Below the pieces are notes generated by a model. The model was not told the DNA's origin and searched no databases. It saw only the letters and a program-made list of their open reading frames with translations. DNA of 64,000 bases from assembly GCF_006345805.1 (NCBI RefSeq), contig NC_043009.1, forward strand, positions 29,884,001-29,948,000, given 5' to 3'. Origin of the DNA: Octopus sinensis. Lineage: Eukaryota. The number at the start of each line of letters is the position of its first letter. Positions within the stretch are counted from its first letter, which is position 1. The position numbers and the translations under genes are program-made. Of the stretch, positions 1,921-64,000 are shown piece by piece.

Positions 1921-2113
1921 GTTAATCCAAACAAGGAAGCACAAAAAAACACAACAATGCGAGGACGTGGAACAAATATAGACGCTCAGGAAAGAAGGAA
2001 AGAAGGAGGATTTAAAGTTTCGAGCGAAGCTCTTCGCCGGAAACATAGGAGAAGGAAAGATCCAGAGAAGGGAAGACAGAGGAAAAAAATCGCCAACGGT
2101 ATGCACGCGGTCA
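1921..2113 (-). mobile_element. Short interspersed repeat carrying a decayed minimal hammerhead (paralogue of 34668-34863)
   Basis: Aligns by eye over about 190 bp with 34668-34863. The minus strand at 2010-2044 reads GTTT-CCGGCGA-A-GAGC-TTC-GCTC-GAAAC-TTT-AAAT, with a mutated core relative to the 34.7 kb copy. Confidence 0.7.
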
Positions 2114-2171
2114 TGTGTGTGTATATATATGTTTATATATATATATATATCTATATATACATGTATATATA

Positions 2172-2223
<52 letters not shown>

Positions 2224-2352
2224 ATATATAATATATAGAAAATTGTATAAAGTGAAAAACTACAGAAGGCTTAAAGGTTAAAAAATATATATATTTGCGT
2301 CAATATGTCTGAAGAATATTAGAAATTTTTTTCTTACAATGACATAGCTTAG

Positions 2353-2391
2353 AAGAAAGACCGGTTTCGCGTTTAGCTTTTCAAATTTCTT
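2353..2391 (-). ncRNA. Type I hammerhead ribozyme candidate, U3-A8 core variant
   Basis: Minus strand: AAGAAA-U-UUGAAAA-GC(UAAAC)GC-GAAAC-CG-GUC/UUUCUU. Stem I is 6 bp, stem III is the palindrome ACCGGU and the triplet is GUC. There is one extra U before the core. Confidence 0.55.
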
Positions 2392-2665
2392 ACGACGTTA
2401 TGTTTATGTTGAATAGAGTTATCGTTATGTTTATGTTTAAAAGAGTTCTAAATAAGGAGGTAATGAGTGATTTCTTCCGGTGTAAAGGAGATAATCGCTT
2501 AAATTTTTTTTCCTTTCCCTTCGTGTGAAAAAAGGAAAAAAGGAAAACAATTTTAAGCGATTATCTCCCTTACACCGGAAGAAATCACTCATTACCTCCC
2601 CTTATTTAGAACTCTTTTAAACATAAACATAACGATAACTCTATTCAACATAAACATAACGTCGT

Positions 2666-2704
2666 AAGAAATTTGAAAAGCTAAACGCAAAACCGGTCTT
2701 TCTT
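2666..2704 (+). ncRNA. Mirror copy of the U3-A8 hammerhead, GAAA mutated to AAAA (predicted inactive)
   Basis: AAGAAA-T-TTGAAAA-GCTAAACGC-AAAAC-CG-GTC-TTTCTT; G12 is replaced by A. Confidence 0.45.
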
Positions 2705-2858
2705 CTAAGCTATGTCATTGTAAGAAAAAAATTTCTAATATTCTTCAGTCTATTGACGCAATATATATATTTTTTAACCTTTAAGCCTTCTGTAGTTTTT
2801 TGACTTTATACTATTTTCTATATATTCAACCACGTTCTTTCACAAACCAACTTTCTTA

Positions 2859-2900
<42 letters not shown>

Positions 2901-3479
2901 TATATATATAATATATATATATTATATATATATATGCTAAAAATATATTGAAAAACAAATATGAACTAGATAATGTCAAGGAGATAAAAGTTTGGTCAAC
3001 GTAGCTGTCCTCAAGATGGATCAGGAACCTGGCGTATGTGATCCTCACTGTGTCCCCGGGGAGATCTTCGATCGCCTCCTTGATCTGATCACCAGCTCGA
3101 TCAGCATAGTGTTACATGCTGAATGGTTGGTGTCGTTATTATTTGCATCTCAGAAATAGCAATCCTTGGTTTTACAATCTGGAGAAATAGTAAGCCAGAA
3201 ATTGGAGGTACTGAAGTCTTAGAAATTCTCCGACAACAGATTCTGACTCGATTTGAAGCGACAACATTTAAATACAAACAAATGACCAAAAAAGGTTGAG
3301 CTAAACCTAGTCAGAATCAAACCCTCAAATCAACACTAGCATGGCTTTCTCTCCGAAACTTACAAGACCTTTCCGGTTTGTTTACAAATGTTATAGAAAT
3401 ATATGTGCACACATATATATACATATGTATATGTGTGTGTGTGTGTGTGTAAGTATTATACATACATACATATATGTAT

Positions 3480-3513
<34 letters not shown>

Positions 3514-3563
3514 ATATATATATATATATATAAGCGAGAAAGAAGCAACAAGAATGGATAGGT

Positions 3564-3653
3564 TTTTAGTACGATCGTTTCATACAGGACAGGTTTTATT
3601 AAAAGTTGCAAAGATTACAGCATATAAACGAGTCCCGTACTCATCAGCTAAAA
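3564..3653 (-). ncRNA. Type I hammerhead ribozyme (extended stem II)
   Basis: Minus strand: UUUUAG-CUGAUGA-GUACGGGAC...GUCCUGUAU-GAAAC-GAUC-GUA/CUAAAA. Predicted cleavage between 3570 and 3569. Confidence 0.85.
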
Positions 3654-3870
3654 TACATGTAAGTTCTCTAGACATCCTAGTGTTTGAGGCTATACTCATG
3701 AAGTAATGTAGATAATTAAACAGATTTCTAAAGTTCATTAAAGTTCTTTAAAGATGATGTACAGTCTTATCACAGAATTTTAAAAAAGTTTTGATAGCAT
3801 CACAGAGAAGGTGACCTAATCCATATGAATTTAGCCTCAAACACTAGGATGTCTAGAGAACTTACATGTA

Positions 3871-3961
3871 TTTTAGCTGATGAGTACGGGACTCGTTTAT
3901 ATGCTGTAATCTTTGCAACTTTTAATAAAACCTGTCCTTGTATGAAACGATCGTACTAAAA
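3871..3961 (+). ncRNA. Type I hammerhead ribozyme (extended stem II)
   Basis: TTTTAG(3871-76)-CTGATGA(3877-83)-GTACGGGAC...GTCCTTGTAT-GAAAC(3944-48)-GATC-GTA/CTAAAA. Predicted cleavage at 3955/3956. Confidence 0.85.
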
Positions 3962-4225
3962 ACCTATCCATTCTTGTTGCTTCTTTCTCGCTTATAATCA
4001 CCCCACATTACTGTATTGTTAAATCAGTATAGTTTTTTTTTTGGTGCATCTAAGTTAGGTACCATATTCAAGTAAATTTTTTAAATTAACTTGAATCTTT
4101 ATTGCTCTTTGAATATATATATATATATATATATACTTGATAATTGTAAGCACCTGTATATACCTTTTGGTGGTGTAGGTGGTAGAGTATATTAATCAAA
4201 ATAAAAACACGATGCCAAGGATTCA

Positions 4226-4303
4226 GCGGTACATATGTTTCGGGCCTTTATTAGACTGATTTATAACAATGCATAATGTGTGTCTATGGCCTTCTTCAGC
4301 CGC
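4226..4303 (-). ncRNA. Type I hammerhead ribozyme (extended stem II)
   Basis: Minus strand: GCGG-CUGAAGA-A-GGCC...GGCC-C-GAAAC-AUAU-GUA/CCGC. Confidence 0.8.
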
Positions 4304-4518
4304 GCACAATTACTAATTCAAGGACATGTATTACATCATAAATTCTATGTTGGGGATGCAAATCTTCACAGTCGCGTACGACAGAGTAGGTCACCAGCAC
4401 AAAAACGAAACGTCAATCCCGTCTTTCATTCAATGTAGACGTCGTACGCGACTGTGAGGATTTGCATCCCCAACATAGAATTATGATGTAATACATGTCC
4501 TTGAAGTACTAATTGTGC

Positions 4519-4596
4519 GCGGCTGAAGAAGGCCATAGACACACATTATGCATTGTTATAAATCAGTCTAATAAAGGCCCGAAACATATGTACCGC
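4519..4596 (+). ncRNA. Type I hammerhead ribozyme (extended stem II)
   Basis: GCGG(4519-22)-CTGAAGA(4523-29)-AGGCCATAGAC...GTCTAATAAAGGCCC-GAAAC(4581-85)-ATAT-GTA/CCGC. Predicted cleavage at 4592/4593. Confidence 0.8.
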
Positions 4597-4625
4597 TGAA
4601 TCCTTGGCATCGTGTTTTTATTTTG

Positions 4626-4696
<71 letters not shown>

Positions 4697-4698
<2 letters not shown>

Positions 4699-5105
4699 CG
4701 CAGGAGTGGCTGTGTGGTAAGTAGCTTGCTAACCAACCACATGGTTCCGGTTCAGTCCCACTGCGTGGCATCTTGGGCATGTGTCTTCTGCTATACCCTC
4801 GGGCCGACCAAAGCCTTGTGAGTGGATTTGCTAGATGGAATCTGAAAGAAGCCTGTCGTATATATATATACATATATATGTATGTGTGTGTATATGTTTG
4901 TGTGTCTGTGTTTGTTCCTCTAGCGTTGCTTGACAACCGATGCTGGCGTGTTTATGTCCCCGTCACCTAGCGGTTCGGCAAAAGAGACCGATAGAATAAG
5001 TACTTGGCTTACAAAGAATAAGTCCCGGGGTCGATTTGCTCGACTAAAGGCGGTGCTCCAGCATGGCCGCAGTCAAATGACTGAAACAAGTAAAGAGAGT
5101 AAAGA

Positions 5106-10635: not shown

Positions 10636-13600
10636 ATGCGTGGAACAACACGATCATCCCCGACCTCAAACACCATGTACAAAGGAACTACGAAGAAATT
10701 AAATGCCACCGATACTATTCAACCCAAGAATAACAATCGAACGGTACGTACATTAAACTTACAACAAAAAATGTACGAAAAACTACACGTGCGAAATAAT
10801 GTGACAACAGAAATAAACGGACCGGTACCCTACGAAAATGACGACCGTCAAAATAATGGGCCGGACGTTGTACCTCATGTCCCGCAAATAAAACCCAAAA
10901 GACGTAAATGGACACGTGAGGAATACATTTCTATCTTACACGCATACTTCACAGCAATGCTCTACCCAAAAAATGAAAATACAACACACATACATATAAA
11001 ATATGGAAGGAAAGTAATAGAGATATAGACTTGGATACAGCAATGAACCCTAATATATTAGCTAACGTACGAAGATACATTCTCAAAGCCAAAAAAATAT
11101 CAGAAATAGAAATAGAACATTTAAAAGAAAAAATAAACCAGGAAAATGTAGATAGAAGCCACACAACAATGCCCAATAATATAAACATTGAAACTGTAAA
11201 ACACGAAGACAAACGCAACATTCCCAACAAACACGATGTAAACAACGAAGGGGAGCCTAATGATTATGATAATATAAAAAATAAAATAATCAAAGAACTG
11301 AAAACCACAGAGCCCAAAATGGACCACCGACCATACCTCCCAAGAATAAAAATAAACGCAATAACAACACCAATTATAAACAACATAAACCTAGCCGTCA
11401 CTGAACTAGCCACTGAAACAAAAAAAAGTGATATCACTGAACTAAATGACTTGATATACGCAGCAGCCACTGCAGCCACAAAAGAAGCTGGATACTCACC
11501 CAAACCCGCCCAAACAGGAGTACCACCACCCAAACAAACCCTGTGGATAAATAACATCCAAAACAAAAAAAAAAAAAAATAGAAAATACCTTTCTATTCT
11601 TAATGAAATCAGCAAACAAGCAACGCTACTGAGCAACAAAAAGAGAACAAAAATGCTCCGCAAATATAACATCACAGAAAAAGATTTGCCGGAGATAAAA
11701 GAAAAGCTGAAGCAAGATATCCTTGCCAAAGATCAAAGGATCCGTCGGTACGAGAAACGCCAACGCTTCTTTGAACAAAACAAAAAGTTCAACTCCAACC
11801 CCAAAAAGTTCTACCAAGAACTGGGAAAAAATAAAATAGAAGTCACTGCAGCGCCAACGGCAGAAGAATTGGAAAAATTCTGGAGAGAAATATGGTCGGC
11901 GAACGAACAGCCAAAAAAAAGGAGTATCAAAATAACAAACTCGGCATCTGAACAACTTTGTACCCCCATAACAACTGAAGAGGTCACCCAGGCACTGCAA
12001 AAACTAAGCAACTGGAAGGCACCTGGGCATGACAAGATCCCCAACTTCTGGTTGAAATATCTAACAGGAATGCACAAAAAGCTGGCTGAAAACTTTAACA
12101 GCATACTAGCAGAGCCAGAGACAATGCCTGAATGGCTCACGAAGGGCAAAACCATCTTAATTCCCAAATCAAATGAAACAACAAAACCAGAAAACTACAG
12201 ACCAATAACCTGCCTCCCTACTATGTTCAAGGCATTTACTGCAGTGATATCGCAAAGGCTGAACAAGCACCTGGACGAAAACAACCTGTTCCCAGAAGAG
12301 CAGAAAGGATGCCGCAAAGGCTCATATGGCTGTAAAGATCAACTAATGATTAATAAAGCCGTAACTGAAGACAGCCACAGAAAGAAGAAAGGCCTCAGTA
12401 TGGCCTGGATTGACTACAAAAAGGCGTTTGATAGCATCCCCCACACATGGATCCTCGAAACACTAGCCATTAACAAAGTAGCACCAACAATCATAAAATT
12501 CATAGAGCACTCTATGAATAAATGGCAAACAGTCCTACACCTCCAAACAAAAGAGGGACTCATGAAAACCAAAGACATCCCCATTAGAAGAGGAATATTC
12601 CAGGGAGACACGCTCTCTCTACTCCTTTTCTGCTTGGCACTGTCACCTCTATCTGATATGCTAAATAGAGCTGGATGCGGATATAAATGTTACGGCAAAA
12701 CGATCAGCCACCTTTTATATATGGAGACCTAAAACTATACGCTGCAAATGACAACAGCTGGAAACACTATTAAAGACAGTTCATGGATTTACCAAAGAAG
12801 TAGATATGAAATTTGGATTAGAAAAATGCGCCAAAGTAACCATGAAAAGAGGAAAACTAGTTAAGAGTAACAACATCACACTAGATAAAACCAATGAAAT
12901 AAAAGAATTAGACCAAAGCCAAACTTACAAATACTTAGGAATCCATGAACTAGATAAGACACAACACACACAAATGAAAGAGAAAATAAAAAAAGAATAT
13001 TATAGACGAGTTAGATCAATACTAAACACAGAGCTCAATGCTAAAAACAAGATAATAGGTATCAACACTTTAGCTGTCCCAGTTATAAGTTACAGCTACA
13101 ATATCCTTAACTGGACACGAAATGAACTGTCCAAAATAGATAGGAAAACAAGAAAAATACTGACAGGATCTAGGATGCATCACCCAAAATCTGACATAGA
13201 AAGACTATATATACAACGTATAGAAGGTGGTAAAATAACTACCATAGGACTGCAAAAATATCTACTTCAGAAGGAAGGAAAACTGATCCAGATAGCAGCA
13301 AAACACGAGCAAAACAAAAAACTGTTCTCAGTATTTAAGGAAGCTGACAAATACAAACAAGAAATCATACCACCTAATAAACACAAAGAAGAAGAAGAAG
13401 ATGATGAAGAAACAACAAAAGCTATAAAACAAATGAAATCCAAACTAAAAATAGAACAGCAACGAGCCATGATAAAACGATGGCAAGAAAAGCCCCTTCA
13501 TGGTAAATACCGCACTAAACTAAACGCAAAAGAAATAGACAAAGAAAAATCCCAGCAATGGTTGAGAAGCTCAGGACTCAAAGCAGAAACAGAGGGATTT

Positions 13601-14247
13601 TTAATTGCAGCACAAGACCAAAGCCTCCCCACCAGAAATTACCAAAAACATGTAATGAAAAGAAATAATACAAGTAACTGCAGAATATGTGGAGATGGAC
13701 AAGAAACAATAAATCATATTATCTCTAGCTGCCCAGTCCTGGCTAAGAAGGAATATATTCACAGTCATGACAGAGTTGGAACCTACATACATTGGAAGCT
13801 ATGCCAACATTATGGAATAACAACAGGAAAAAGATGGTATAGGCACACACCAGAAAAGGTCACAGAAAACGAGAAAGCAACCATACTCTGGGATATGCCG
13901 ATACACACAGATAGAGAAATTAAGGCCAACACACCAGATATAGTTGTCAGAGATCATGAAGAAAAAAAATGCTTTCTAATTGATGTATCAATACCGGCAG
14001 ATGACAACGTGTCTCTAAAAGAAATGGAGAAACCCTCAAAATACAAAGACCTGGAAATAGAGGTAACTAGAATGTGGAACCTGAAAACAGAAACAATTCC
14101 TATCATAGTAGGTGCATAGGCATGATAAAAAAATATTCAGACAAATACATAACAAAAACACCAGGACTTACAAACACATATAGCATACAGAAAATTGCAC
14201 TACTAGGCACTGCACACATCCTACGCAGAACACTTTCCATACAATAA
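10636..14247 (+). pseudogene. RT-RLE polyprotein of the R4/Dong element, at least 4 frameshifts
   Basis: RT motifs WKAPGHDKIPNFWLK, NYRPITCLPTMFK, AWIDYKKAFDSIPH and RGIFQGDTLS. YMDD is broken by a 1-bp deletion near 12725 (ATGGAGACCT). Other shifts occur near 11.0 kb, at the poly-A 11566-79 and near 14117. The C-terminal QKIALLGTAHILRRTLSIQ ends at 14247. Confidence 0.92.
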
Positions 14248-34303: not shown

Positions 34304-34667
34304 TGTGTGCGTGTGTAATAATAATAATTTCTTAAGCAACGTTAATGATGAGATCCAGGTTGCAAAATTGATTCAACAAAACATGTTGAAAGGAGTCCCA
34401 CTCATAAGGGACAGTAGCAGAACCATTTTGCAAGATAAAGATTACTACCAAATCCATCTTGTGGTTACTTAAGAAATTATTTTCATCATCTCAACTAACA
34501 CTGCGGAACTTCTGAAGTAGACCCAACGGAAATATACCAAGACTGAGGATGACACAAGGTAGCCGAAACTGTGCCAGTGCTCTCTACTCAACACTACAAC
34601 ACACTAGTCGACATATACCCATTAGTCCCCAAACTATTAAATATATATACATATATATATATATATA

Positions 34668-34863
34668 GCTAATCCAAACATGAAAACACAAAGAGAAAAC
34701 TCAACAACGCGAGGGCGTGGAACAAGTATAGTGTTATTGGACGATCAGGAAAGAAGGAGGGTTTAACGTTTCGAGCGGAGCTCTTCGTCAGAAACATAGG
34801 GAAAGGAAAGATACAAAGAAGGGAAGACGGAGGAAAAACTCGCCAACGGTACACACGCGGTCA
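34668..34863 (-). mobile_element. Short interspersed repeat carrying a minimal hammerhead
   Basis: Paralogous to 1921-2113. Confidence 0.75.
34761..34795 (-). ncRNA. Minimal type I hammerhead ribozyme
   Basis: Minus strand: GUUU-CUGACGA-A-GAGC(UCC)GCUC-GAAAC-GUU/AAAC. Stem III is the loopless palindrome ACGU (dimer-type). Confidence 0.75.
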
Positions 34864-62296: not shown

Positions 62297-62840
62297 GTAT
62301 ATGTATGTGTGTGTGCATACATATATGTGTAAATATATATATATCGAGAGGTATACAGAGTACACACATACACACACACACACTCATACACACACTGACA
62401 CACACACTCATACACACACTGACACGCACACTCACACATACATCCTCGTAAAAAGACGCGCGAAGAAAAGTTAAGGAAAAGGATACATCAGGATGACGTT
62501 TGGAAATATAAGTAGGTGTCTTTTAATGTTTCGAGCTTACGCTCTTCTAGAGAAAGAATACAGTGGGGGCGGAGGAATGATCGCCATGCTGAAATGACTG
62601 GAAAAAAAAGCAATGGACTTGAAGTGTGGGTGCCATAGGAGACAACTATGAGTTGACATTTGAGTATGATATTCACATATAAATAAGTGCAGGCGTGGAT
62701 GTGTGGTAAGAAGTTTATTTCACAACCACATGATTTCCAGTTCAATCCCACTACATGGAATCTTACACAAGTGTCTTTTACGGGTGGACCAAAAGCATGT
62801 GAGTGAATCTGGTATTCGAAAACTGAAAGAAGCTGCTCAG

Positions 62841-62880
<40 letters not shown>

Positions 62881-63017
62881 TATATATATTATATAGAGGG
62901 CATTATTACACATAAATGCCGCGCGCTAGGAGGGACTTTTAAAGTTATAACTACCAAATACAAACAAATCGCACGGAATGCAATTCTCGAAGCGAGTCAT
63001 TTAAAAACAGAATTTAG

Positions 63018-63079
63018 CTCCAGATCACCTGTGATTTCGCAATTAACGCAGTATCAGCGTCCCTTACTCTTCAGTGAAG
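63018..63079 (-). ncRNA. Type I hammerhead ribozyme
   Basis: Minus strand: CUUCA-CUGAAGA-GUAA...UUGC-GAA-AUCAC(AG)GUGAU-C/UGGAG. Predicted cleavage at 63023/63022. Confidence 0.85.
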
Positions 63080-63495
63080 CGAACTCAAGATATTTCATGA
63101 ATGAAGAAAATCAACATACCAGATAGACAACCGTCGTCTCCATCGTAGCATATGGAACTGTTCACCCCTCATACATCTGTGTAAATGGCTCATAAGAGAA
63201 GAAATCTGTAAATATTTTTCACTTGAAAATATTTATTTATATTATATAGAGGGCATTATTACACATAAATGCCGAACGCTAGGAGGGACTTTTAAAGTCA
63301 TAACTACCAAATATAAACAAATCGCCATTTTCTAAATTTGTTCCGAAGAAGCATGTTGCTATCGAAATGCAATTCGAAAAAGCCCGACATTTACACAGAT
63401 GTATGAGGGGTGAACAGTTCCATATGCTACGATGGAGACGACGGTTGTCAATCTGGTATGTTGATTTTCTTCATTCATGATATATCTTGAGTTCC

Positions 63496-63557
63496 CTTCA
63501 CTGAAGAGCAAGGGACGCGGATACTGCTTTAATTGCGAAATCACAGGTGATCTGGAG
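63496..63557 (+). ncRNA. Type I hammerhead ribozyme
   Basis: CTTCA(63496-500)-CTGAAGA(63501-07)-GCAA...TTGC-GAA-ATCAC(AG)GTGAT-C/TGGAG. Predicted cleavage at 63552/63553 after AUC. Confidence 0.88.
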
Positions 63558-63833
63558 CTAAATTCTGTTTTTAAATGACTCGCTTCGAGAATTGCATTCG
63601 GTGCGATTTGTTTATATTTGGTAGTTATCACTTTAAAAGTCCCTTCCTAGCGTGCGGCATTTATGTGTAATAATGCCCCCTATATAATATAAATAAATAT
63701 TTTCAAATGAAAAAATTTACAGATTTTTTCTCTTATGAGGTTTTTCACGCTAACTACTTGATAATTCTTATTAAGATTTTATCCTATTTTATATACATTT
63801 ATATATATATACATTTATATATTATATATATAT

Positions 63834-63899
<66 letters not shown>

Positions 63900-63907
63900 T
63901 TTAACAA

Positions 63908-64000
63908 TTAAGGATAATCTCTTAATAAGGGATCTTAACAAGAAATTATCAGGCAGCTAGCGTGAAAACCTCATAAAAGAAAAGAATTCGAAAATAATTC
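63908..64000. mobile_element. Third arm of element D, truncated by the window edge
   Basis: AGGATAA...TTATCAGGCAGCTAGCGTGAAAACCTCATAAAAGAAAAGA is a diverged reverse complement of about 63722-63786. Confidence 0.7.

What the first reader, a model, noticed from the sequence alone, without database searches (positions are those of the whole stretch)
2231..4633. Family of fold-back elements each carrying two outward-facing hammerhead ribozymes
Seen in sequence: three long palindromes lie within 2.4 kb (A 2231-2826, B 3529-3996, C 4188-4633), with a fourth at 62888-63739. I see no sequence similarity between their arms, yet the architecture is the same. Each arm holds a type I hammerhead fold (stem I - CUGANGA - stem II - GAAA - palindromic stem III - NUH - stem I'), on the minus strand in the left arm and the plus strand in the right arm. 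None codes for protein. Established: type I HHRs occur in the pseudo-LTRs of Penelope-like elements, which often have inverted termini, and in non-LTR retrozymes, which are normally direct tandem arrays. Inference: these are a diverse class of non-autonomous PLE-derived two-ribozyme palindromes. Transcription of either strand yields one sense ribozyme plus its antisense, so the RNA either self-cleaves or collapses into a long dsRNA hairpin (a possible siRNA or ADAR substrate). I do not know of this being described for cephalopods, but cannot check.
Basis: partly seen in the sequence, partly recalled or inferred. Interest (0 to 1): 0.92.

Follow-up and report, generated by a model that had tools for sequence, protein, structure and literature searches.

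The report
Inverted retroelement copies carrying hammerhead ribozymes
The four long palindromes are real, and three carry a complete hammerhead ribozyme motif in each arm, but they look like the already described head-to-head insertion form of Penelope-like or retrozyme-type retroelements in (TA)n microsatellites, not a new class of element.

Summary
Four near-perfect palindromes lie at the stated coordinates, with arms 95-98% identical. The four arm sequences share no detectable similarity with each other, and none has a meaningful ORF.

A hammerhead descriptor finds exactly six hits in 64 kb: both arms of B, C and D, all facing outward. Dinucleotide shuffles give 0.02-0.15 hits. Palindrome A has no canonical hammerhead. 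It has one atypical U3-A8 variant in the left arm, and the right-arm copy carries G12->A. A fifth, solo, compact hammerhead lies at 34761-34795 on the minus strand, outside any palindrome.

Rfam supports only B, and below threshold: Hammerhead_1, 22 bits against a gathering score of 34.

Every architectural feature has a published precedent in Penelope-like elements (PLEs):
- an inverted 5'-truncated copy joined head-to-head;
- partial tandems;
- a bias for (TA)n targets;
- minimal type I hammerheads with a palindromic helix III that act as dimers;
- paired hammerheads on opposite strands 100-700 bp apart;
- siRNAs from Penelope inverted repeats.

The sources are PMC8557442, PMC4209133 and PMC3681739. 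Verdict: a new member of a known kind. Self-cleavage and the mobilising enzyme are untested.

The parts
2230..2516 (-). Palindrome A, left arm. The element copy reads on the minus strand and its 3' end abuts (TA)n 2134-2223.
   Evidence: blastn against the right arm: 95.9% over 290 nt; alignment.
2539..2826 (+). Palindrome A, right arm. A 34-nt non-TA stretch (2827-2860) follows before (TA)n 2861-2934.
2353..2391 (-). A: atypical hammerhead-like motif, aagaaa(u) UUGAAAA gc-uaaac-gc GAA ACCGGU C^uuucuu. It has the U3-A8 core variant, a 2-bp helix II and a 1-nt bulge beside helix I.
   Evidence: It is the only hit of the U3-A8 descriptor in the window; shuffle mean 0.93, or 0.15 when helix I is at least 6 bp. 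No Rfam hit. The U3-A8 variant is known in Cercyon PLEs (PMC4209133).
2666..2704 (+). A: right-arm copy of the same motif, with G12 changed to A at 2689 (GAAA becomes AAAA). Expected to be catalytically dead.
   Evidence: Arm alignment; sequence.
3529..3699 (-). Palindrome B, left arm. Its 3' end abuts (TA)n 3477-3532.
   Evidence: 98.3% over 172 nt against the right arm.
3700..3824 (.). B: central non-palindromic spacer, 125 nt.
3825..3996 (+). Palindrome B, right arm.
3564..3653 (-). B: type I hammerhead motif in the left arm. Helix I is 6 bp, the core is CUGAUGA, helix II is 9 bp with a 59-nt segment, then GAA, the palindrome ACGAUCGU, and A^.
   Evidence: Descriptor hits. The minimum-energy fold shows helices I and II.
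3871..3961 (+). B: type I hammerhead motif in the right arm, ending 38-41 nt before the outer end of the arm.
   Evidence: Descriptor. Rfam RF00163 Hammerhead_1, 22 bits (gathering score 34), E = 0.002 in a 121-nt search, model positions 1-45.
4188..4382 (-). Palindrome C, left arm.
   Evidence: 97.4% over 195 nt against the right arm.
4383..4440 (.). C: central spacer, 58 nt.
4441..4634 (+). Palindrome C, right arm. Its 3' end abuts (TA)n 4629-4696.
4226..4303 (-). C: hammerhead motif in the left arm, gcgg CUGAAGA a-GGCC...GGCC-c GAA ACAUAUGU A^ccgc.
   Evidence: Descriptor allowing one mismatch or bulge at the base of helix II. The minimum-energy homodimer forms helix III between the two molecules.
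4519..4596 (+). C: hammerhead motif in the right arm, identical in sequence to the left-arm copy. The cut site is 41 nt from the arm end.
   Evidence: No Rfam hit.
62873..63325 (-). Palindrome D, left half. It is a 1.3-copy tandem in minus orientation: unit positions 216-352, then 1-316, with the junction at 63187/63188. Its 3' end lies in (TA)n 62842-62888.
   Evidence: blastn of the right arm against the window; sequence.
63388..63739 (+). Palindrome D, right unit, 352 nt. A 51-nt extension (63740-63790) follows, reaching the TA-rich stretch that leads into (TA)n 63800-63897 (TRF: 63790-63897).
63017..63080 (-). D: hammerhead motif in the left arm. Helix I is 6 bp, the core is CUGAAGA, helix II is GUAA/UUGC plus an inner hairpin, then GAA, AUCACAGGUGAU, and C^.
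   Evidence: The minimum-energy homodimer is the double hammerhead.
63496..63557 (+). D: hammerhead motif in the right arm.
   Evidence: No Rfam hit.
34761..34795 (-). Solo compact minimal hammerhead, not in a palindrome: guuu CUGACGA a GAGC-ucc-GCUC GAA ACGU U^aaac. On its strand, (TA)n 34652-34667 lies about 97 nt downstream of the cut site.
   Evidence: Descriptor. Shuffle mean 0.04, and 0 of 300 shuffles for compact forms. No inverted partner. No Rfam hit.

Best explanation
Each palindrome is the footprint of one retrotransposition event of a short, non-coding retroelement that carries a hammerhead ribozyme. The element is either a 5'-truncated Penelope-like element (PLE) end or a non-autonomous 'retrozyme'-type derivative. 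It inserted into a (TA)n microsatellite.

The two arms are two cDNA copies of the same RNA species joined head-to-head, with 5' ends at the centre and 3' ends outward against (TA)n. This is the 'inverted 5'-truncated copy' arrangement typical of PLE integration. It probably arises when both sides of the endonuclease-made break prime reverse transcription, or by template switching or snap-back.

Unequal truncation points would leave the non-palindromic spacers of B and C. A nearly complete fold-back would give A. Template jumps would give the tandem junction in D.

The ribozymes are minimal type I hammerheads whose helix III is a palindrome of 6-12 nt. Like published PLE hammerheads, they should be active only as dimers of two sense copies, for example in tandem transcripts. 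In the inverted arrangement one transcript carries one sense and one antisense copy and folds into a long hairpin. The inserted palindromes are therefore most likely dead-end by-products, not working ribozyme devices.

Shown here: the palindromes, the motifs and their statistical excess, their outward orientation, the (TA)n context, the tandem junction in D and the solo copy. Inferred: the RNA origin, PLE dependence, the mode of palindrome formation, dimer-dependent cleavage and any dsRNA consequence.
For: - Six descriptor hits fall only in the arms of B, C and D, against 0.02-0.15 expected per window.
- A fourth independent canonical hammerhead occurs as a solo copy.
- All four palindromes have the sense strand pointing outward.
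- The outer (3') ends lie in or near (TA)n tracts.
- D contains a direct tandem junction of a 352-nt unit as well as the inversion.
- Arms are 95-98% identical within a palindrome and unrelated between palindromes. This matches the 'extreme sequence variability' of PLE hammerheads (PMC4209133).
- Several motif details were not imposed by my descriptor. Helix III is palindromic over 8-12 nt in B, C and D. Helix II is long and two-part. The solo copy has an unpaired nucleotide after A9. D and the solo copy have G10.1-C11.1. A has the U3-A8 variant. All are listed as PLE hammerhead traits in PMC4209133.
- The predicted homodimers of C and D use helix III between molecules and are about 10.6-10.8 kcal/mol more stable than two monomers.
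- Rfam Hammerhead_1 aligns over its full length to B.
- PMC8557442 describes the inverted 5'-truncated copy, partial tandems, a one-sided tail and a (TA)n bias for PLEs, and PLEs in Octopus species. PMC13282606 lists Penelope families in Octopus vulgaris.
Against: - No PLE reverse transcriptase or GIY-YIG ORF is in the window. The only RT found belongs to a LINE, and only 10 of the 33 ORFs of 110 aa or more were scanned.
- No other genomic copies or autonomous relatives could be examined, so PLE dependence rests on analogy.
- Rfam gives no hit at gathering score. C, D, A and the solo copy get no hammerhead hit even at E <= 10.
- The helix II segments of 29-60 nt are unusually long for hammerheads.
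- Monomer folds are not more stable than shuffles.
- A lacks a canonical ribozyme.
- tRNA-like SINE copies in the window are also bounded by (TA)n. The (TA)n association is therefore not specific to PLEs and could reflect LINE-type mobilisation.
- In D the directly repeated part does not contain the hammerhead, unlike classical pseudo-LTRs.
Confidence: 0.72

Rival explanations
1. Hammerhead-bearing SINE-like elements mobilised by a LINE rather than a PLE. The element ends in a (TA)n tail that a LINE reverse transcriptase recognises, and the palindromes arise by twin priming.
For: tRNA-like SINE copies in the same window are also bounded by (TA)n. A LINE RT is present in the window. No PLE ORF was found among the ORFs scanned.
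Against: Hammerheads with a palindromic helix III are documented in PLE pseudo-LTRs and retrozymes, and head-to-head inverted copies are a PLE hallmark (PMC4209133, PMC8557442; bioRxiv 10.64898/2026.07.22.740005). Twin priming in LINEs inverts part of one copy; it does not give near-full symmetric palindromes.
Confidence: 0.12
2. Foldback or MITE-type DNA transposons with very long terminal inverted repeats and TA target sites, which happen to contain hammerhead-like sequence.
For: The arms are long and near-perfect, the flanks are TA-rich and there is no coding capacity.
Against: Three unrelated 'families' would each need an independently acquired complete hammerhead in the same outward orientation, against a chance expectation of 0.02-0.15 per window. 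No other copy of any arm is in the 64 kb. D has a tandem junction and there is a solo hammerhead element, and neither fits a transposon with terminal inverted repeats.
Confidence: 0.06
3. The palindromes are maintained functional loci, such as hairpin-RNA, endo-siRNA or ADAR-substrate genes, or devices in which divergent transcription yields two identical ribozyme RNAs that pair through helix III.
For: As RNA, C folds into a hairpin of about 195 bp (-341.5 kcal/mol, z = -40). Outward transcripts of the two arms would be identical in sequence and could pair through helix III. Penelope inverted repeats give siRNAs in flies (PMC3681739).
Against: There is no evidence of selection. Arms differ by 2-5% with indels. 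One copy in A carries a core-killing G12->A change, and helix-weakening changes occur in D and B. Expression data could not be examined. The arrangement is explained by the insertion mechanism alone.
Confidence: 0.06
4. Assembly artefact, or DNA-level fold-back duplication at fragile (TA)n tracts acting on single-copy insertions.
For: (TA)n tracts are hairpin-prone. A diverged tail-to-tail pair does flank (TA)n 63800-63897.
Against: The palindrome centres are unique sequence, not (TA)n. There are four separate small palindromes inside the window, and their arms have diverged by substitutions and indels.
Confidence: 0.04

Closest known systems
Penelope-like element (PLE) insertions with an inverted 5'-truncated copy and pseudo-LTRs (Evgen'ev & Arkhipova 2005; Craig et al. 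2021, PMC8557442)
   Same: Head-to-head inverted copies with 3' ends outward. Partial tandem in D. Insertion in or next to (TA)n microsatellites. Extra non-repeat sequence on only one side of A, B and C. Hammerhead on the sense strand.
   Different: No RT or GIY-YIG ORF is present. Both copies are only 170-450 nt long. In D the direct repeat does not include the ribozyme. (TA)n bias was reported mainly for Naiads, which lack canonical hammerheads.
Minimal type I hammerheads of metazoan PLEs (Cervera & De la Pena 2014, PMC4209133)
   Same: CUGANGA...GAAA...UH core. Short helix I (4-6 bp). Long helix II. Palindromic helix III that implies dimeric activity. U3-A8 core variant (A). Unpaired nucleotide after A9 (solo copy). 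High sequence diversity within one genome. Paired motifs on opposite strands 100-700 bp apart.
   Different: The helix II segment is much longer here (29-60 nt) in B, C and D. Helix III is a longer palindrome (8-12 nt). Rfam scores are below threshold or absent.
Non-LTR retrozymes of animals (Cervera & de la Pena 2020, PMC7229834; Li et al. 2026, bioRxiv 10.64898/2026.07.22.740005)
   Same: Short non-coding, AT-rich units of about 170-400 nt with one type I hammerhead. D has a 352-nt unit with a tandem junction. The family is proposed to be non-autonomous PLE derivatives.
   Different: Retrozymes are defined by direct tandem arrays that yield circular RNAs. A, B and C are inverted, not tandem, so one transcript cannot supply two sense ribozymes.
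Rearranged Penelope copies with long inverted repeats that give siRNAs in Drosophila (PMC3681739)
   Same: Inverted PLE-derived repeats able to form long dsRNA.
   Different: Those are rearranged full-length elements with measured small RNAs. No expression data were available here.

Membership tests
Hammerhead ribozyme, type I (Rfam RF00163) | Conserved core C3-U4-G5-A6-N7-G8-A9, G12-A13-A14, A15.1-U16.1, and H17 not G | tested here: met
   Met in both arms of B, C and D and in the solo copy. A has only the U3-A8 variant in one arm, and G12->A in the other.
Hammerhead ribozyme, type I (Rfam RF00163) | Three helices around the core, with helix I open-ended | tested here: met
   Helix I is 4-6 bp, helix II is 4-9 bp (with one bulge or mismatch in C) and helix III is 4-5 bp. 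Shuffle expectation is 0.02-0.15 per window.
Hammerhead ribozyme, type I (Rfam RF00163) | Score at or above Rfam's gathering threshold (34 bits) | tested here: not met
   No hit at gathering score. B reaches 22 bits. C, D, A and the solo copy have no hit at E <= 10.
Hammerhead ribozyme, type I (Rfam RF00163) | Site-specific self-cleavage | not testable with these tools
   Needs in vitro transcription of monomer and dimer constructs.
PLE-type minimal hammerhead (PMC4209133) | Palindromic 15.2-16.2 / helix III, allowing an intermolecular helix III | tested here: met
   B ACGAUCGU, C ACAUAUGU, D AUCACAGGUGAU, A ACCGGU, solo copy ACGU. Cofolding gives an intermolecular helix III for C and D.
PLE-type minimal hammerhead (PMC4209133) | Unpaired nucleotide between A9 and 10.1, and a G10.1-C11.1 pair | tested here: inconclusive
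   The solo copy has both. D has G-C but no bulge. C fits only with bulges on both sides. B has G-U and no bulge.
PLE-type minimal hammerhead (PMC4209133) | Location in the pseudo-LTR of an element that encodes RT plus GIY-YIG endonuclease | tested here: inconclusive
   No such ORF was found among the 10 of 33 window ORFs of 110 aa or more that were scanned. The source genome was not searchable. A metagenome scan returned only chance bacterial matches.
PLE insertion architecture (PMC8557442) | An inverted 5'-truncated copy adjoining the 5' end (head-to-head) | tested here: met
   The sense strand, defined by the hammerhead, points outward in all four palindromes. Central spacers are variable.
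PLE insertion architecture (PMC8557442) | Partial tandem (pseudo-LTR) | tested here: inconclusive
   Present in D only (junction at 63187/63188, unit 352 nt). Absent in A, B and C.
PLE insertion architecture (PMC8557442) | Insertion bias for microsatellites, (TA)n | tested here: met
   One outer end of A, B and C and both ends of D run directly into (TA)n. The other ends lie 34-118 nt from the next tract. The window holds 54 (TA)n tracts and SINE copies share this context, so specificity is low.
Non-LTR retrozyme (PMC7229834) | Direct tandem repeats of about 170-400 nt monomers, each with a type I hammerhead | tested here: not met
   A, B and C are inverted, not tandem. D has only 1.3 tandem copies with one ribozyme per strand.
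Foldback / MITE DNA transposon | Terminal inverted repeats shared by many copies, with a fixed target-site duplication | tested here: inconclusive
   No second copy of any arm is in the window. Target-site duplications cannot be read in (TA)n flanks.

The most novel reading that the evidence does not exclude
Head-to-head hammerhead palindromes may be more than insertion debris. In this (presumably cephalopod) genome they could form an abundant, recurrently generated class of loci. Read-through transcripts would give about 200-bp dsRNA hairpins that feed siRNA or ADAR pathways. Alternatively, divergent outward transcripts, which are identical in sequence, could pair through the palindromic helix III and reconstitute an active dimeric ribozyme without any tandem copy.
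Probability: 0.1. Interest if true: 0.6.

Novelty: new member of a known kind. Interest (0 to 1): 0.3.

Why it matters
If confirmed genome-wide, this would add cephalopods to the animals whose genomes carry PLE or retrozyme-type hammerheads; I found no paper in the searchable library that describes them there. It would also supply clean, young examples of the poorly understood head-to-head PLE integration product: short enough to read end to end, with identifiable centres, spacers and one tandem junction. That could help in modelling how PLE reverse transcription resolves at both sides of a break. The hammerheads have unusually long helix II segments and are missed by Rfam thresholds, which is a practical warning for ribozyme censuses. 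Otherwise the finding is ordinary repeat biology.

Tried and rejected
- Rfam over the whole window at gathering score, and at E <= 10 over 2000-5000, gave no hammerhead hit. It returned only spurious miRNA-precursor matches to the hairpins and microsatellites.
- Short-stretch Rfam searches rescued only B.
These are chance matches, not relatives.
- I did not scan the prokaryotic genome collection, or the viral, phage, plasmid and E. coli collections, because they cannot hold this eukaryotic repeat.
- I looked for a canonical hammerhead in A on both strands, including the CTGAAGA at 2309 on the plus strand. None satisfies the helices.
- I looked for remote similarity among the arms and found none.
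- A shared 11-mer, ACTTGATAATT, in the flanks of C and D is not above chance.
- I looked for similarity between the one-sided flanking stretches and their own elements. Only a weak resemblance of 3997-4113 to the C element appeared.
- Monomer folding energies do not differ from shuffles, so thermodynamic stability is not useful evidence here.
- ARAGORN finds no tRNA in the window.
- A Pfam scan of 10 of the 33 ORFs of 110 aa or more found a LINE RT but no PLE protein.
Full report
**Observation.**
- Gap-free extension finds inverted arms at 4188-4341/4481-4634 (98% complementary), 2309-2457/2600-2748 (99%), 3586-3699/3825-3938 (98%) and 62931-63187/63388-63644 (96%).
- Gapped alignment and blastn extend the arms as follows. 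A: 2230-2516 and 2539-2826, 95.9% identical. B: 3529-3699 and 3825-3996, 98.3%. C: 4188-4382 and 4441-4634, 97.4%. D: 62873-63187 and 63388-63703, 95.3%.
- These are the only genuine long palindromes in the 64 kb. All other inverted pairs are microsatellite self-matches of 71-90% complementarity.
- The arms of different palindromes share no detectable similarity (local-alignment z < 2.5 for all six pairs).
- No arm has another copy in the window, apart from an 87% tail fragment of D at 63932-63983.
- No ORF longer than 62 codons lies inside A-C apart from microsatellite read-through. D holds one 90-codon ORF that I did not scan.

**Ribozyme motifs.** I wrote a descriptor for a type I hammerhead. 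It requires:
- helix I of at least 4 bp;
- the core CUGANGA;
- helix II of at least 4 bp, allowing one mismatch and a segment of up to 120 nt;
- GAAA;
- a self-complementary helix III closed by A15.1-U16.1;
- H17 not G.

It gives exactly six hits in the window: 3570-3647 (-), 3877-3955 (+), 4230-4299 (-), 4523-4592 (+), 63023-63074 (-) and 63501-63552 (+). One hundred dinucleotide-preserving shuffles gave a mean of 0.02 hits. A more relaxed version returned the same six, against a shuffle mean of 0.15. The two arms of a palindrome are copies of each other, so this amounts to three independent motifs. They fall in about 1.2 kb of arm sequence, where about 0.001 would be expected.

Several features that the descriptor did not demand are also present.
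- Helix III is a perfect 8-nt palindrome in B (ACGAUCGU) and in C (ACAUAUGU). In D it is a 12-nt palindrome with a central tandem G-A mismatch (AUCACAGGUGAU).
- Helix II continues into a second inner stem in all three: UAGAC/GUCUA in C, and a 4-bp inner hairpin in D.
- The predicted homodimers of C and of the D minus-strand copy are the double-hammerhead arrangement, with helix III formed between the two molecules. They are 10.6 and 10.8 kcal/mol more stable than two monomers. For B the best predicted dimer is a different structure.

**Independent check with Rfam.** The result is mostly negative and should be stated plainly.
- Nothing reaches gathering score in the window.
- No hammerhead appears at E <= 10 in 2000-5000.
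- In short-stretch searches only B's right arm matches Hammerhead_1 (RF00163). The match covers the whole 45-position model at 22 bits against a gathering score of 34, with a 54-nt insertion in helix II.
- C, D, A and the solo copy give no hammerhead match.
- Monomer folding energies are no better than shuffles.

The long helix II segments and the minimal helix III explain the low Rfam scores. Formally, though, these are descriptor-level candidates, not Rfam-grade members, and cleavage is untested.

**Palindrome A.** It has no CUGANGA-type hammerhead on either strand. A descriptor for the U3-A8 core variant (UUGANAA) is documented for Cercyon PLEs (PMC4209133). It has a single hit in the whole window: A's left arm, minus strand, 2359-2384, again facing outward. 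The motif reads aagaaa(u) UUGAAAA gc-uaaac-gc GAA ACCGGU C^uuucuu. It needs a bulge next to helix I and has a 2-bp helix II. The window-wide chance expectation is 0.93, or 0.15 when helix I is at least 6 bp. Its position and orientation make it suggestive, not established. The right-arm copy reads AAAA where GAAA is needed, which removes G12. The statement that each arm holds a hammerhead is therefore true for three of the four palindromes.

Allowing a very short helix III gives one further hit, 34765-34791 on the minus strand. It reads guuu CUGACGA a GAGC-ucc-GCUC GAA ACGU U^aaac. It has the unpaired nucleotide after A9, the G10.1-C11.1 pair and the palindromic 15.2-16.2 positions that Cervera and De la Pena list as hallmarks of PLE minimal hammerheads. 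Three hundred shuffles gave 0.04 hits for this descriptor and none for compact forms. The copy has no inverted partner. On its strand a (TA)n tract lies about 97 nt downstream of the cut site. Hammerhead elements in this window therefore also occur singly.

**Context.**
- The window holds 54 (TA)n tracts.
- One outer end of A, B and C and both ends of D run directly into (TA)n. The other end of A, B and C is separated from the next tract by 34, 118 and 52 nt of other sequence.
- D is not a simple palindrome. Read on the minus strand, its left half is unit positions 216-352 followed directly by positions 1-316 of a 352-nt unit, with the junction at 63187/63188. This is a partial tandem. The right half is one full unit (63388-63739) plus a 51-nt extension.
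- As RNA, the whole of C folds into a hairpin of about 195 bp (-341.5 kcal/mol, z = -40). That buries the ribozyme sequence in duplex.

**What it most likely is.** Taking the hammerhead strand as the sense strand, every palindrome is two copies joined head-to-head, with 3' ends outward against (TA)n. Published descriptions of PLE insertions match this.
- Craig et al. [quoted passage not shown] They also describe partial tandems that form pseudo-LTRs, a 30- to 40-bp tail at one end, a strong bias for microsatellites including (TA)n, and PLE families in Octopus species.
- Cervera and De la Pena 2014 (PMC4209133): PLE pseudo-LTRs carry minimal type I hammerheads with a short helix I, a large helix II and a small palindromic helix III, which act only as dimers. 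Within one genome these are extremely variable in sequence. [quoted passage not shown]
- Animal retrozymes are now argued to be non-autonomous PLE derivatives (bioRxiv 10.64898/2026.07.22.740005).
- Penelope families are annotated in Octopus vulgaris (PMC13282606).

I conclude that A-D are insertion products of short PLE-type or retrozyme-type RNAs. Each was made in a single event: its arms are near-identical to each other but unrelated to those of its neighbours.
- The variable centres fit two reverse-transcription tracts that started at both sides of the break and stopped at different points. This covers the 125-nt spacer in B and the 58-nt spacer in C.
- A, with a 22-nt centre, also fits a snap-back.
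- D records an additional template jump.
- The clustering of A, B and C within 2.4 kb follows from repeated hits into one long (TA)n region.
- A dimeric hammerhead needs two sense copies, and a transcript through a palindrome has only one plus its complement. The inserted palindromes are therefore probably dead ends for ribozyme function.

These mechanistic steps are inference. None could be tested here.

**Caveats and rivals.**
- No PLE ORF is in the window. The only reverse transcriptase (10636-14119, RVT_1 plus zf-RVT) is LINE-like, and only 10 of the 33 ORFs of 110 aa or more were scanned.
- tRNA-like SINE copies are also bounded by (TA)n. Mobilisation by a LINE that recognises (TA)n tails therefore cannot be excluded.
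- A MITE or foldback DNA transposon origin is unlikely. It would need three unrelated families to have acquired complete, equally oriented hammerheads independently. It also does not explain the tandem junction or the solo copy.
- A selected function as a dsRNA locus is possible. There is precedent for siRNAs from Penelope inverted repeats in flies (PMC3681739). Against it, the arms show ordinary decay, including a core-killing substitution in A.
- The source organism could not be identified with the tools.

**Novelty.** Each architectural element has a published precedent. What may be new is the host lineage, the unusually long helix II segments (29-60 nt) and the extended palindromic helix III. 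No paper in the searchable library describes hammerheads in cephalopods beyond a passing mention in PMC8557442. This is a new member of a known kind, of modest interest.

Noticed in passing
It has an unpaired A after A9 and a G10.1-C11.1 pair, as in published PLE hammerheads. (TA)n lies about 97 nt downstream.
   Followed up: yes
window 10636-14119 (+): A run of ORFs encodes a reverse transcriptase (Pfam RVT_1, E = 5.5e-20) followed by zf-RVT. This is a LINE-type retrotransposon, not a Penelope-like element.
   Followed up: partly
window 4697-5105 (+) and about 62690-62841 (+): Two copies of a tRNA-like SINE, starting GGCGCAGGAGTGGCTGTGTGGTAAG. Each abuts a (TA)n tract, and the first contains an internal TA/TG microsatellite. 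ARAGORN calls no tRNA. This shows that the (TA)n association is not specific to the hammerhead elements.
   Followed up: partly
window 63932-63983 (-) versus 63726-63777 (+): An 87%-identical inverted copy of the 3' extension of element D lies on the other side of (TA)n 63800-63897 (tail-to-tail). The window ends at 64000, so the rest of that copy cannot be seen.
   Followed up: partly
window 3997-4113: The stretch between palindrome B and the (TA)n at 4114 has two colinear patches that resemble element C: 4003-4031 matches 4541-4570 (z about 4), and its end resembles C's 3' end. It may be an old truncated C-like copy. The evidence is weak.
   Followed up: partly
window 2935-3405: A unique segment of about 470 bp is flanked by (TA)n tracts on both sides, between palindromes A and B. 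It has no hammerhead, no palindrome and no significant ORF. Its nature is unknown; it may be another insertion or the original flank.
   Followed up: no
whole window: There are 54 merged (TA)n tracts (96 pure runs of at least 6 units) in 64 kb, plus many (TG)n tracts. Rfam at permissive thresholds reports these and the palindrome centres as spurious miRNA precursors (MIR161, MIR5084, mir-297).
   Followed up: yes
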